A DNA stretch of 64,000 nucleotides from Ramazzottius varieornatus (taxonomy: Eukaryota > Animalia > Tardigrada): the NCBI GenBank assembly GCA_001949185.1, contig BDGG01000009.1:1539624-1603623 (forward strand), read 5' to 3'. The notes below the pieces were generated by a model. That model saw only the letters and a program-made list of their open reading frames with translations. It was not told the DNA's origin and ran no database searches. Shown in pieces: positions 25,264-28,200 of this stretch; position 1 is the first letter of the stretch; every line of letters starts with the position of its first letter. Position numbers and translations under genes: made by a program.

Positions 25264-28200
25264 CTATTGATCCGCTTGATCGGCTTGCTCCTCGCCCTCT
25301 CCTTGCGTGTCTGACGTCCAGAGCTAAAACACAAGAAAAACATGACCCTTCGTCGTCAACCTCAAAGACCAAAAGGGGATGTGGGCCTGAACATGAATCA
25401 AGTGGCGCAAGCTCTCGACCACTAAGCATGACCAGCTGCGCCACTTGACTGAACAATCAGGTTCAAGTCATCTGTCCGACGTTGCAAAGGACTTTGCGCT
25501 CGAGTTTCTCAGCTCGAAAACCGATGGCCCTTACCGTAAGGTTGTCTCGGAGGAGCTGCATTATGAGGGTGCTGTCCTTGTAGGAATCTTCATTAAGAGT
25601 ATCCAGCTCCGCAATTGCATCATCAAAAGCCTAAAACAAGAGCTGTTACTTGAACCTTTGCAACCATGAAGAAGCAGCTAAGTTAGAAATAGTGGTCAAC
25701 GCGCCCATCCGCTGCGTCGGGTTGGTTCCACAAGAGGGGGAGGCCTTTACCTGTTTGGCCAGATGGCAGGCACGGTCTGGGGAATTCAATATTTCATAGA
25801 AAAAGACTGAAAAATTGAGGGCCAGACCGAGGCGAATGGGATGTGTGGGCTGCATTTCACTCTTGGCAATGTCAAACGCATCCTGGTACGCCTTCTGCGA
25901 CGTCTCCACAATGGCTGCAAGCAACAAGCACACTTTCGGTTACTCACCTGCTTGGCTAAATGGCAGGCCTTGTCAGGTGCATTGAGAATCTCGTAATAGA
26001 AGACGGAAAAGTTGAGGGCCAAGCCCAAGCGAATGGGATGTGTCGGTTGCATTTTGCTCTTGCTGATATCAAAGGCGTCCTGATAGGCTTTCTGCGAGTT
26101 GTCTATCACACCTACGTCCCAAACACAGACATTCTCCCTTTCATTCTCCCTTTAACTTGTCAAAACACTAACAATTTCAAACTAGCACCTTGCTTTTGAC
26201 AAGCGTTTATGGGTGAATCAGCAAGAAGCACAAATGCAACCGGGAAAAAGGGACCTCTAGTCTTTCACTGTGGAGACACTCCGAGGACAAGGCCGGCCAC
26301 TAGACACTATGTTATTGGTGATACTTGTTACACCGTCGGGACTCTTGGGTGAACAAGGCAGACGTCAGTAGGAAGCCATGCTACGGCCTTGCTACCATGC
26401 ATGCATGGAGGGAGGGAAGACTGTGCGCCTTGCAGCTGCGGGTCGTTTCGCTTCACTGGCCTGGCGCACTACTTCCTCTTGGCTATCACATCCACTCTAT
26501 CACCTACCCAGCGCGCTACCAACCGACCCTTTTTCCCATCGACAAAGATGGAGAAAGGCCATTCCAGTGAGACGAAAATCGATAAAGCGCAAGCTGTGCT
26601 GGCGCAATTACGGCGGCTAGTTCCTACTATAGCTTTAGCGAGGGGTGCGCCAGGCAGCACGCCAAGCCGAGCCAGCAAGAATCATGCAAGTCGACGAGAT
26701 GACCAAGAGGGCCATCAAATGACAGACACGCGCGCACAACAGTCATTATCGTCGACCTGCATTCAAAGTGCCAACTTCCGTCCACATCTGCCATTCTCAC
26801 AAGGCACAAGAGCGCAACAGCCCACAAAGATGACAACACAAGCAGCAGCAAAGTGAGGTTGGGACGTACTGTTGCGGGTGTCTCCGGTGGCCACTTCGGC
26901 CAGATATCTGTAATAGTCGCCCTTCATCTTCAGGTAGAAGACTTTGCTCTCGGGATTGCTGGCTTTAGGGATCAGGTACTTGTCCAGCAGACCCTGCAAC
27001 CACAGCAAAGACAACAAGGCCTTAACCAACTCTCCATTATTGCCCTATTACAAGGCAAAAATTAACAGCTGAAGAAAGCGATCGATAACTGTCTTCCCCT
27101 TCGATGCCCATCTCTGACACCGTTCCTAACCTCACAGGCTATCCCACTCTTTGTGTGGGCAGGCAAGGGTCGATATGCCATCATGGCAGCACATAAACTT
27201 ATCCCTTTAGTCGGCCTAGCTTGCACGACTAAACGGCACTAATGCCCACACAGGCAAGAGCTTCAACCCATGGAAGCTGCAAGCTGGTAGAGGGGAAGAC
27301 CTACAAACAGCTTCAGCTTTGTTATTAATCATCCAGGCACACGTCATGGCCCGGCTGACAGACGGTGAAACACTCAACCCCAACATGACACTGGATAGCT
27401 GCTCTGACTTCGCATCAACCGACGCGCTCCTTCTTCCCATTCCCTCTTGCGTCATCCACATTCACCACATGGCTTCTCCTCTCAAAAGTCTTCTGCGAAG
27501 ATGGGGAAGAAAACAAGGAGGGGTGGGGGAAAGGTCCGAAAGAATAACGGCATCTGACTCGTTCACCATTGTGCAAGAAATACCAGAAATAATCACGCAA
27601 CATTTGTCTTGAGAAGACAAAGTGGCCATCAGAGAAGTCGTCTTCCCTTCCCACCACTTTATCTCCTACTACGCTGTTTGTTTTTCTAATGAGACTAAAT
27701 AAAAGCATACTTGACCTTCCTGTTATCCTACAAATCAAACCAGGATCGCTACATTCGCTTGATCTAATGGTTGATGTTATCGGTGAACACAATTCACCGC
27801 AGAATTTGACTTTCGAATCACCAGTCACCGATCGATCACAACCTCGACTGATCAACTAGCAGCCCACAAGAAGACTGAACCTCGAGAACGTAACATGATA
27901 ACCTTCAGTCACATGTACCAAAGCGATTTGGGTGAATCACTGATGAGCGACGAGGATTAAGTTAAAGAAGATAATATTATTTTGAATTTGAAGGACATCT
28001 TGCTTCACTCAATCAAGCAAAGCCACCAAGCATGAACTTACCAATACGTCATTGCAAATTTCGCGGAGCTCCTTTTCCACCTTCTCGCGATACTCTTTGG
28101 CCATCTGTTGCTTCTTCTCGCTGCCATCTGTCTTCTGTTCGATAGAGGAGATGACTCTCCAGGAAGATCGGCGGGCACCCACAACGTTCTTGTAGGCGAC

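What the first reader, a model, noticed from the sequence alone, without database searches (positions are those of the whole stretch)
25846..26242. One intronic 'docking' element complementary to the coding sequence of both mutually exclusive 14-3-3 exons
Seen: in the pre-mRNA, intron element 26242-26217 (CGGUUGCAUUUGUGCUUCUUGCUGAU) pairs 24 bp with exon A (AUCAGCAAGAGCAAAAUGCAACCG, 26067-26044), which puts exon A's 3' splice site in the loop. By my hand alignment it can alternatively pair ~18 bp (3 G-U) with the equivalent segment of exon B (CAAGAGUGAAAUGCAGCC). Known: competing docking/selector RNA pairing controls the duplicated exons of insect 14-3-3 zeta and Dscam, using intronic selectors. 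Inference: here the selectors are the codons themselves, in the segment where the two exons differ, so coding divergence would tune exon choice. I do not know this architecture as described.
Basis: partly seen in the sequence, partly recalled or inferred. Interest (0 to 1): 0.85.

Follow-up and report, generated by a model that had tools for sequence, protein, structure and literature searches.

The report
Intron elements pairing with alternative exons
In a tardigrade 14-3-3 gene, short stretches of the upstream intron can base-pair with the same coding segment of each of two either-or exons; this probably helps set which exon is used, but so far it rests only on sequence and folding calculations.

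Summary
Intron element 26242-26217 (minus strand) pairs 24 bp, with two 1-nt bulges, with exon A 26067-26044. The duplex energy is -35.5 kcal/mol and its pairing probability is 0.83-0.99. It is the strongest complementary pair in the whole pre-mRNA (0 of 10,000 shuffles reach it).

That is what paralogy alone gives. It is 15 kcal/mol weaker than the exon A pairing and does not appear in the ensemble even when exon A is blocked. "One dock, two competing selectors" is therefore not supported.

I found a candidate second partner instead. The same homologous segment of exon B (25879-25843) pairs with its own element, 26827-26791, which lies 42 nt after the upstream donor (-40.2 kcal/mol; P 0.73-0.92; genomic null about 0.5%). 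Each element prefers its own exon by 13-16 kcal/mol.

Exon:intron duplex potential of -38 kcal/mol or stronger occurs in 3 of 4 14-3-3 loci with duplicated exons, and in 0 of 10 loci with a single exon.

Best reading (0.45): two nested helices mask exon A and bring exon B's acceptor to the donor. Rivals are ADAR editing duplexes and neutral inverted repeats, which occur about once per 12.5 kb here.

The scan also noted an RNA-duplex switch at another exon pair of this genome (s1-794840); I did not test it.

The parts
26217..26242 (-).
26044..26067 (-). Exonic arm in exon A (codons I-S-K-S-K-M-Q-P), 44 nt into the exon
   Evidence: it is the best-bound window of exon A
26791..26827 (-). Candidate 'dock B': intron element 42 nt after the exon 2 donor, complementary to the homologous segment of exon B
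   Evidence: 28 bp, -40.2 kcal/mol. P 0.73-0.92. Genomic null P(<=-40.2) = 0.5%. By Watson-Crick-only alignment it reaches only about the 90th percentile.
25843..25879 (-). Exonic arm in exon B (codons ..[10 protein letters not shown]), homologous to the exon A arm.
   Evidence: it is the best-bound window of exon B
26285..26306 (-). Second intronic arm, collinear with dock A, pairing with the 3' end of exon A
   Evidence: 18 of 22 complementary; flank-only p = 0.006. P 0.77-0.97.
25953..25974 (-). Partner of 26306-26285 in exon A; it ends 5 nt before exon A's donor
   Evidence: (I9)
25948..26111 (-). Exon A (164 nt), with a weak pyrimidine tract and a consensus donor
25915..25947 (-). 33-nt spacer intron between exon A and exon B
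25751..25914 (-). Exon B (164 nt)
   Evidence: A near-identical exon (53 of 54 aa) exists in another public contig, P0031.
26265..26308 (-). Candidate alternative partner of exon B's first 38 nt (25914-25877). It includes 26277-26266, which pairs 12 bp with 25912-25901, and overlaps the arm that pairs with exon A's 3' end.
   Evidence: -39.4 kcal/mol. The 12-bp core alone is not significant (p about 0.11).
26648..26690 (-). Candidate second partner of the exon A segment (26089-26046)
   Evidence: -40.5 kcal/mol with larger windows. Not seen in the ensemble; weak evidence.
26155..26204 (-). Local hairpin inside the dock A loop. Its 3' arm holds the best branch-point-like motif of exon A (A at 26160).
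   Evidence: -12.8 kcal/mol
26130..26153 (-). Purine-rich 12-nt direct repeat (two copies), just upstream of exon A's acceptor and inside the loop
   Evidence: Read directly
26870..26993 (-). Constitutive exon 2. Its last base completes Ser with exon A or Thr with exon B.

Best explanation
The gene is a 14-3-3 zeta-type gene of a tardigrade with two 164-nt alternative exons.

Shown:
- Exactly one exon must be included, because 164 is not a multiple of 3.
- The exons are only 33 nt apart.
- The upstream intron carries an element (26242-26217) that forms a very stable helix with codons 26067-26044 of exon A. A collinear second helix (26306-26285 with 25974-25953) extends the pairing almost to exon A's donor.
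- The homologous codons of exon B (25879-25843) have their own candidate partner (26827-26791), 42 nt behind the exon 2 donor.
- Each intron element prefers its own exon by 13-16 kcal/mol, because of the 7 of 24 bases that differ between the two exon segments.
- The two helices are nested.

Inferred:
- The inner helix forms first during transcription. It locks the middle and the 3' part of exon A into duplex and leaves exon A's weak acceptor in a structured loop, which slows recognition of the proximal exon.
- When exon B emerges about 200 nt later, the outer helix loops out about 910 nt, including exon A, and brings exon B's acceptor next to the exon 2 donor.
- Together the helices shift choice towards the distal exon B, and their stabilities set the A:B ratio.
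- Mutual exclusivity itself comes from the 33-nt spacer (steric clash between A's donor and B's branch site) and from the reading frame, not from the helices.
For: - Helix A: -35.5 to -38.0 kcal/mol. 0 of 10,000 shuffles reach its score. Top pair in the pre-mRNA. P 0.83-1.0 in all contexts.
- Extended pairing with exon A: ddG -39.6 kcal/mol, against -13.9 for exon B with the same intron arm. The second collinear segment has p = 0.006.
- Helix B: -40.2 kcal/mol, z about -4 against shuffles. The real-genome null gives 0.5% at this energy. P 0.73-0.92.
- The cognate preference is shown by the 2x2 energy matrix.
- In a scan of all exon windows, the two homologous segments are each exon's best-bound window.
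- Association with duplicated exons: duplexes of -38 kcal/mol or stronger involving the exon occur here, in L023 (25 bp, -60.9 kcal/mol) and in L015. They occur in none of 10 single-exon 14-3-3 loci. My own Fisher arithmetic gives p about 0.01.
- Both exon types are kept under purifying selection in other contigs (52-53 of 54 aa).
- Precedent from papers: RNA pairing that bridges distant splice sites or loops out exons in insect 14-3-3 and Dscam1 (PMC11802352), and pairings that offset the proximal-exon advantage (PMC8791459).
Against: - There is no RNA evidence and no orthologous tardigrade sequence. Neither conservation, covariation nor any effect on splicing is shown.
- Helix B is significant only by energy. 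By Watson-Crick-only alignment it is near the 90th percentile, and long-range pairs (about 950 nt) are poorly predicted by thermodynamic folding.
- Inverted repeats at least as strong as helix A are common in this genome: 16 in 200 kb.
- Flexible duplex searches give several other partners of similar energy, so the exact architecture is uncertain.
- The direction of the effect (repressing A, promoting B) is inferred.
- L017, the relative of L023, has only a weak complement at the same place (p about 0.02). Such duplexes may therefore be short-lived.
Confidence: 0.45

Rival explanations
1. The duplexes are editing-site complementary sequences. Each intron element folds onto the same codons of its exon to make a double-stranded substrate for ADAR, which recodes one or more adenosines in the I-S/A-K-S-K/E-M-Q segment. 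Any effect on splicing is secondary.
For: - Imperfect intron:exon duplexes of 20-40 bp with bulges and internal loops are the classical ADAR substrate (established knowledge; reviews found).
- The genome encodes ADAR-type genes. A deaminase ORF at C2:3184641-3185216 has the HAE, PCG and SCSDK motifs, with a dsRNA-binding motif about 500 nt upstream on the same strand. A second deaminase plus dsrm pair lies on C4.
- This reading explains why the same codons are targeted in both exons.
- The K/E difference between A and B is the kind of change that A-to-I recoding mimics.
Against: - Duplex potential goes with having duplicated exons (3 of 4 loci), not with 14-3-3 in general (0 of 10 single-exon loci). 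Editing does not predict this.
- Dock B sits 42 nt from the donor and the helices enclose splice sites. That fits splicing control.
- No editing of tardigrade transcripts, or of this 14-3-3 segment, was found in the papers searched.
- No reads could be examined.
Confidence: 0.2
2. The element is a neutral by-product. One or more template-switch or inverted-duplication events copied a piece of the exon in reverse into the intron. The helix can form but does nothing, and the other pairings are what flexible folding finds in any 750-nt intron.
For: - Local inverted repeats scoring 16 or more occur once per 12.5 kb in 200 kb of this genome, and three times in this window.
- Template switching is known to create near-perfect hairpin arms in one step (PMC5453318, PMC8794818).
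- Patchy collinear similarity between 26306-26217 and the reverse complement of exon A looks like a decayed inverted copy.
- L023's perfect duplex is nearly absent in its relative L017, which suggests fast turnover.
- The scan looked at very many windows, so some chance hits on alternative exons are expected.
Against: - The chance that such a repeat has an arm in one of these two exons is a few percent (my estimate).
- A second energy outlier on the homologous segment of the other exon brings the joint chance to roughly 1e-4 (my estimate).
- The intron arm differs from a perfect copy by two 1-nt insertions and no substitution. That is not the usual pattern of neutral decay.
- Enrichment in loci with duplicated exons over single-exon loci.
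Confidence: 0.2
3. One reading: 26242-26217 is a single docking site that pairs either with exon A or with exon B, and this competition selects the exon.
For: Both pairings exist on paper: 24 bp with exon A and 18 bp with exon B. They cannot form at once. Dock:B would loop out exon A.
Against: - Dock:B is 15 kcal/mol weaker and its partner is transcribed later and lies further away.
- With the exon A arm blocked, the dock finds local partners, not exon B.
- Exon B's segment is predicted to be occupied by 26827-26791.
- The complementarity to B follows from paralogy alone.
Confidence: 0.1

Closest known systems
Docking-site/selector competing RNA structures of insect 14-3-3 zeta (xi), Dscam1, Mhc and MRP1 (Graveley 2005; Yang et al. 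2011; as described in PMC6071210, PMC4691838, PMC11802352)
   Same: The gene family is the same and probably the exon pair too: first and second copies group by type across species. In both, long-range base pairing in the pre-mRNA of a duplicated-exon cluster can loop out an exon and bring distant splice sites together.
   Different: In insects the 14-3-3 docking site is downstream of the cluster, one docking site serves all selectors, and selectors are intronic. Here the elements are upstream, each exon has its own partner, the exonic arms are codons, the helices are nested rather than exclusive, and no downstream docking site is found.
Balancer ('hidden') pairings in Dscam1 exon 6 that offset the first-come, first-served advantage of proximal exons (PMC8791459)
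   Same: A second set of helices is proposed to hold back the proximal exon and favour the distal one.
   Different: The Dscam1 balancers are conserved intronic elements validated by mutation in flies. Here nothing has been validated and the arms lie in exons.
Intron:exon stems that mask an alternative exon or its splice site. Examples are chicken beta-tropomyosin exon 6B (Clouet d'Orval 1991 and Libri 1991, from my own knowledge; not in the searched library), and the tau exon 10 and SMN2 exon 7 stems (PMC11802352).
   Same: A stable helix made of flanking intron plus exon sequence that would reduce use of one exon; in beta-tropomyosin this is one exon of a mutually exclusive pair.
   Different: Those stems are local and cover a splice site directly. 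Here the acceptor is in a 149-nt loop, the stem lies 44-67 nt inside the exon, and a second long-range helix serves the sister exon.
ADAR editing-site complementary sequences (GluA2 Q/R site; many Drosophila neuronal genes)
   Same: An intronic element pairs imperfectly with coding sequence over 20-40 bp, and ADAR-type genes are present in the genome.
   Different: No editing has been shown. The elements lie in the upstream intron and the duplexes are associated with duplicated exons.
Steric-hindrance mutually exclusive exons (alpha-tropomyosin exons 2/3 type; established knowledge)
   Same: A 33-nt spacer puts exon A's donor on top of exon B's likely branch region, and the 164-nt exon length breaks the frame if both or neither exon is used.
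   Different: This explains why only one exon is used. It does not explain which one, and that is the part the helices would supply.

Membership tests
Docking-site/selector system (Dscam1 exon 6 / insect 14-3-3 type) | One docking site complementary to a selector at every variable exon, with pairings of comparable strength | tested here: not met
   Dock A pairs with exon A at -38.0 kcal/mol and with exon B at -22.3. Dock B pairs with exon B at -40.2 and with exon A at -27.3. These are two cognate pairs, not one shared dock.
Docking-site/selector system (Dscam1 exon 6 / insect 14-3-3 type) | The pairings are mutually exclusive, so only one exon is activated | tested here: not met
   The two strongest helices are nested and coexist in the ensemble (P about 1.0 and 0.73). 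Dock A:exon B is absent even with exon A blocked.
Docking-site/selector system (Dscam1 exon 6 / insect 14-3-3 type) | Selectors are intronic, next to each variable exon | tested here: not met
   Both exonic arms are codons. The inter-exon intron is only 33 nt.
Docking-site/selector system (Dscam1 exon 6 / insect 14-3-3 type) | The elements are conserved, with compensatory changes across species | not testable with these tools
The metagenome and genome scans returned no tardigrade locus.
Exon-masking intron:exon stem | A stable helix made of exon sequence and flanking intron, well beyond chance | tested here: met
Exon-masking intron:exon stem | The helix covers or encloses a splice signal of the regulated exon | tested here: met
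   The acceptor and branch region of exon A lie in the 149-nt loop. The outer helix ends 5 nt from exon A's donor.
Exon-masking intron:exon stem | Disrupting the helix changes exon use, and compensatory mutations restore it | not testable with these tools
   This needs minigenes or edited animals.
ADAR editing-site complementary sequence | An intron:exon duplex of about 20 bp or more, in a genome that has a catalytically intact ADAR | tested here: met
   For the duplexes. For ADAR: deaminase ORFs next to dsrm motifs, one with the HAE/PCG/SCSDK motifs.
ADAR editing-site complementary sequence | A-to-G differences between RNA reads and the genome inside the duplex | not testable with these tools
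Template-switch / inverted-duplication relic | A reverse-complement copy of sequence lying within a few hundred bases | tested here: met
   The arms are 149 nt apart and match at 24 of 24 bases plus two 1-nt insertions.
Template-switch / inverted-duplication relic | Absent from sister lineages, with arms evolving at the neutral rate | not testable with these tools
   No sister-species DNA could be fetched.

The most novel reading that the evidence does not exclude
A selector system embedded in the exons. The same few codons of each mutually exclusive 14-3-3 exon serve as an RNA address that pairs with that exon's own element in the upstream intron, and the codon differences between the exons (7 of 24 bases, 4 of them synonymous) give the specificity. 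Two nested helices, one masking the proximal exon and one bridging the donor to the distal exon, would then set the isoform ratio. Because the switch is purely thermodynamic, it could respond to temperature or hydration in an animal that survives drying.
Probability: 0.25. Interest if true: 0.8.

Novelty: new variant of a known kind. Interest (0 to 1): 0.6.

Why it matters
RNA-structure control of mutually exclusive exons is known almost only from insects, and there it uses intronic docking sites and selectors. If the tardigrade helices work, three things follow. The same ancient 14-3-3 exon pair would be steered by a different, independently evolved structure. Coding sequence itself can carry the selector, which puts synonymous sites under RNA-level constraint. 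And each exon can have a private partner instead of competing for one dock. The independent exon:intron duplexes in two other animals' 14-3-3 genes (L023, L015) suggest a recurring solution. The case is small and can be tested with a minigene.

Tried and rejected
**Routes that gave no data**
Contigs holding the near-identical exons P0001, P0002 and P0031 could therefore not be read.
- The metagenome scan returned mostly intron-less transcripts and no tardigrade locus. The genome-contig scan returned only stray contaminants.
- A protein search with the ORF that overlaps the dock found nothing; a blank there means nothing.
- Rfam found no family in 24200-29700.
- Papers: none on tardigrade mutually exclusive splicing or editing.

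**Methods that failed**
- Whole-intron RNAduplex and a permissive alignment score were uninformative, because long loose duplexes swamp the signal. I replaced them with a stringent score and windowed energies.
- One null run timed out and was repeated at smaller size.

**Ideas rejected**
- An insect-like downstream docking site: no pair scoring 11 or more, and no energy outlier, involves intron 25750-25631.
- Pairing of 26196-26218 with the 3' UTR (I5/I6): weak, at chance level.
- The 11-bp pair 26537-26527 with 26252-26242: about one such pair is expected by chance in 2.9 kb.
- Residual similarity between the two collinear arms: not significant (p = 0.145).

- The spliced (joined) protein was never built or searched. 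Exons were searched apart, by reference.
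Full report
**What is there.** The window belongs to a 55.8-Mb, 200-contig assembly that earlier notes of this scan treat as a tardigrade. A 14-3-3 zeta-type gene lies on the minus strand:
- exon 1 coding part 28335-28042
- exon 2 26993-26870
- intron 26869-26112
- exon A 26111-25948
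- a 33-nt spacer 25947-25915
- exon B 25914-25751
- intron 25750-25631
- exon 5 25630-25535
- last exon from 25323, with the stop at 25266-25264

Exons A and B are both 164 nt and encode variants of the same 54 residues. Using both or neither breaks the reading frame. Exon A has a purine-rich, weak acceptor region and a consensus donor. Near-identical copies of each exon type (52-53 of 54 residues) exist in other public contigs. Across three other animals that carry the duplicated pair, first and second copies group weakly by type. Both exons are therefore real and the pair is old.

**The observation.** It holds exactly as written. Element 26242-26217 is the reverse complement of 26067-26044 apart from two single extra bases in the intron arm: 24 bp at -35.5 kcal/mol, or -38.0 with flanking pairs. 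The minimum-energy fold of 26300-25700 keeps the helix. Its pair probabilities are 0.83-0.99 in folds of 361, 601 and 1401 nt. The 149-nt loop contains exon A's acceptor.

**Is it chance?** With a stringent complementary-alignment score the pair scores 16. Ten thousand dinucleotide shuffles of the intron give mean 8.7 and maximum 15 (Gumbel p about 1e-4). It is the best pair in the 2.9-kb pre-mRNA, the next scoring 12. However, local inverted repeats at least this strong are not rare in this genome: three loci in the 64-kb window score 16 or more, and 16 do in 200 kb sampled from nine contigs, about one per 12.5 kb. By my estimate, the chance that such a repeat has an arm in one of these two exons is a few percent. 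That is low, but not negligible for a scan of many windows.

**The proposed competition with exon B.** The 18-bp pairing (3 G-U) exists, at -20.4 kcal/mol. It is 15 kcal/mol weaker than the exon A pairing and only modestly better than a shuffled dock (mean -12.9, p 0.02). This is expected, because the two exon segments share 17 of 24 bases. When the exon A arm is forced single-stranded, the dock takes local partners and never exon B. I therefore do not support "one docking site, two competing selectors".

**What turned up instead.** In the 1401-nt ensemble the exon B segment was paired, with P about 0.9, to a different part of the same intron. Followed up, 26827-26791 and 25879-25843 form 28 bp at -40.2 kcal/mol. 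This element starts 42 nt after the exon 2 donor.

The 2x2 energy matrix shows cognate preference:

| | exon A segment | exon B segment |
|---|---|---|
| dock A | -38.0 | -22.3 |
| dock B | -27.3 | -40.2 |

A scan of every 41-nt window of both exons against both flanking introns shows that the two homologous segments are each exon's best-bound window. Nothing notable appears in the downstream intron.

I built a null from 600 random 41-nt segments and their upstream 758 nt, drawn from 264 kb of this genome. It gives P(<=-38.0) = 0.8%, P(<=-40.2) = 0.5% and P(<=-41.8) = 0.17%. By my estimate, both exons being hit at the same homologous place has a joint chance of about 1e-4.

Caveats:
- By Watson-Crick matches alone, dock B is only near the 90th percentile.
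- The helix spans about 950 nt.
- Larger windows yield further candidates of similar energy: 26308-26265 with exon B's first 38 nt (-39.4), and 26690-26648 with the exon A segment (-40.5).

Dock A is solid. Dock B is a candidate.

**Extended pairing with exon A.** Upstream of dock A, 26306-26285 is complementary to 25974-25953 (18 of 22; flank-only p 0.006; P 0.77-0.97). This helix is collinear with the first and ends 5 nt from exon A's donor. The intron arm 26310-26210 gains -39.6 kcal/mol on binding exon A, against -13.9 for exon B. Inside the loop, a local hairpin (26204-26155) holds the best branch-like motif, and a 12-nt purine-rich direct repeat (26153-26130) precedes the acceptor.

**Other species.** No tardigrade orthologue could be read. 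Among the 80 metagenome loci, three are genomic and carry the duplicated pair:
- **L023:** the first 25 nt of the second exon pair with the downstream intron by 24 Watson-Crick pairs and one G-U, at -60.9 kcal/mol. This is the only strong pair in that locus.
- **L015:** a GGTT-type repeat that starts at the first exon's donor can pair with the M-Q-P-T-H-P codons of either copy (-42.9 and -36.5). This is low-complexity sequence, so the evidence is weak.
- **L017:** a relative of L023. It shows only a weak complement at the same place (p about 0.02).

Ten single-exon 14-3-3 loci have no exon:intron duplex below -36 kcal/mol, and twelve have no alignment score above 12. Three of four against none of ten gives a Fisher p of about 0.01 by my arithmetic. 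That figure is uncorrected for the two exons per locus.

**Rivals.**
- *ADAR editing* cannot be excluded. The genome has deaminase ORFs next to dsRNA-binding motifs, one with the HAE, PCG and SCSDK motifs, and intron:exon duplexes are the classical substrate. The link with exon duplication and the position of dock B near the donor argue for splicing, but only reads can decide.
- *A neutral origin* by template switching or inverted duplication (PMC5453318, PMC8794818) fits the high repeat density and the apparent turnover between L023 and L017. It fits less well with two hits on homologous segments, or with an intron arm that differs from the exon by two insertions and no substitution.

**Mechanism proposed.**
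- Shown: the complementarities, their statistics, the nesting of the helices and the splice-site geometry.
- Inferred: helix A forms first and delays use of the proximal exon A. Helix B then loops out about 910 nt and brings exon B's acceptor next to the exon 2 donor. The A:B ratio follows from the helix stabilities. Exclusivity itself comes from the 33-nt spacer and the frame.

**Comparison with what is known.** In insects the 14-3-3 docking site is downstream and the selectors are intronic (PMC6071210, PMC4691838). Reviews and the Dscam1 balancer paper describe intronic elements only. I found no paper on tardigrades. Masking stems made of intron plus exon are an old idea (beta-tropomyosin exon 6B, from my own knowledge). 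I therefore rate this a new variant of a known kind, not a member of the docking/selector family, whose defining features it fails.

- Everything rests on one genome and on thermodynamic prediction.
- After I still sent exon A and exon B to protein and locus searches by reference, because no reason such as likeness to human DNA had been stated. If that was the reason, those calls should be judged accordingly.
- The joined spliced model was neither built nor searched.

Noticed in passing
L023:262-286 and L023:585-609: In an unidentified metagenomic animal with the same duplicated 14-3-3 exon pair, the first 25 nt of the second exon pair almost perfectly (24 Watson-Crick pairs + 1 G-U, -60.9 kcal/mol) with the downstream intron. 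The helix encloses that exon's donor. That exon reads Gly where all others read Lys, and the intron copy reads the Arg-type codon at that spot.
   Followed up: partly
L015:795-860: A GGTT-type microsatellite that begins at the donor of the first 14-3-3 alternative exon can pair with the M-Q-P-T-H-P codons of either exon copy (-42.9 and -36.5 kcal/mol). It is low-complexity sequence, so the significance is unclear.
   Followed up: partly
L017:4427-4453 with L017:3966-3980 and L017:3538-3548: Two adjacent 11-nt stretches in the intron downstream of the exon pair are perfectly complementary to two different upstream introns. This is an insect-like downstream docking arrangement, but each match is near chance level.
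   Followed up: no
window 24689-24819 (minus strand): The strongest inverted repeat near the gene (score 20): arms 24819-24792 and 24716-24689, with an AATAAA hexamer (24733-24728) in the loop. It lies about 540 nt after the 14-3-3 stop codon and may gate polyadenylation, or may be another neutral repeat.
   Followed up: partly
window 25920-25952 (minus strand): Within the 33-nt spacer, exon A's donor is predicted to pair with exon B's pyrimidine tract and acceptor region (P about 0.5-0.6). This small hairpin would hide both signals at once.
   Followed up: no
G000:C2:3184120-3185830 and G000:C4:3504123-3506204: Two ADAR-type loci (a dsRNA-binding motif upstream of an adenosine-deaminase domain on the same strand). 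The C2 copy keeps the HAE, PCG and SCSDK motifs; the C4 copy lacks them in the ORFs I read. A third deaminase locus lies at C2:3220181-3221155.
   Followed up: partly
L100-L119 (200 kb sampled from G000): Local inverted repeats are frequent, about one per 12.5 kb at score 16 or more. Several are very strong (scores 25-41) and are probably terminal repeats of small transposons.
   Followed up: no
window 4323-4338 / 5148-5163 and 33383-33404 / 33590-33611: Two further strong local inverted repeats in the window (16 nt at 94% and 22 nt at 86% complementarity). Their nature is unknown.
   Followed up: no
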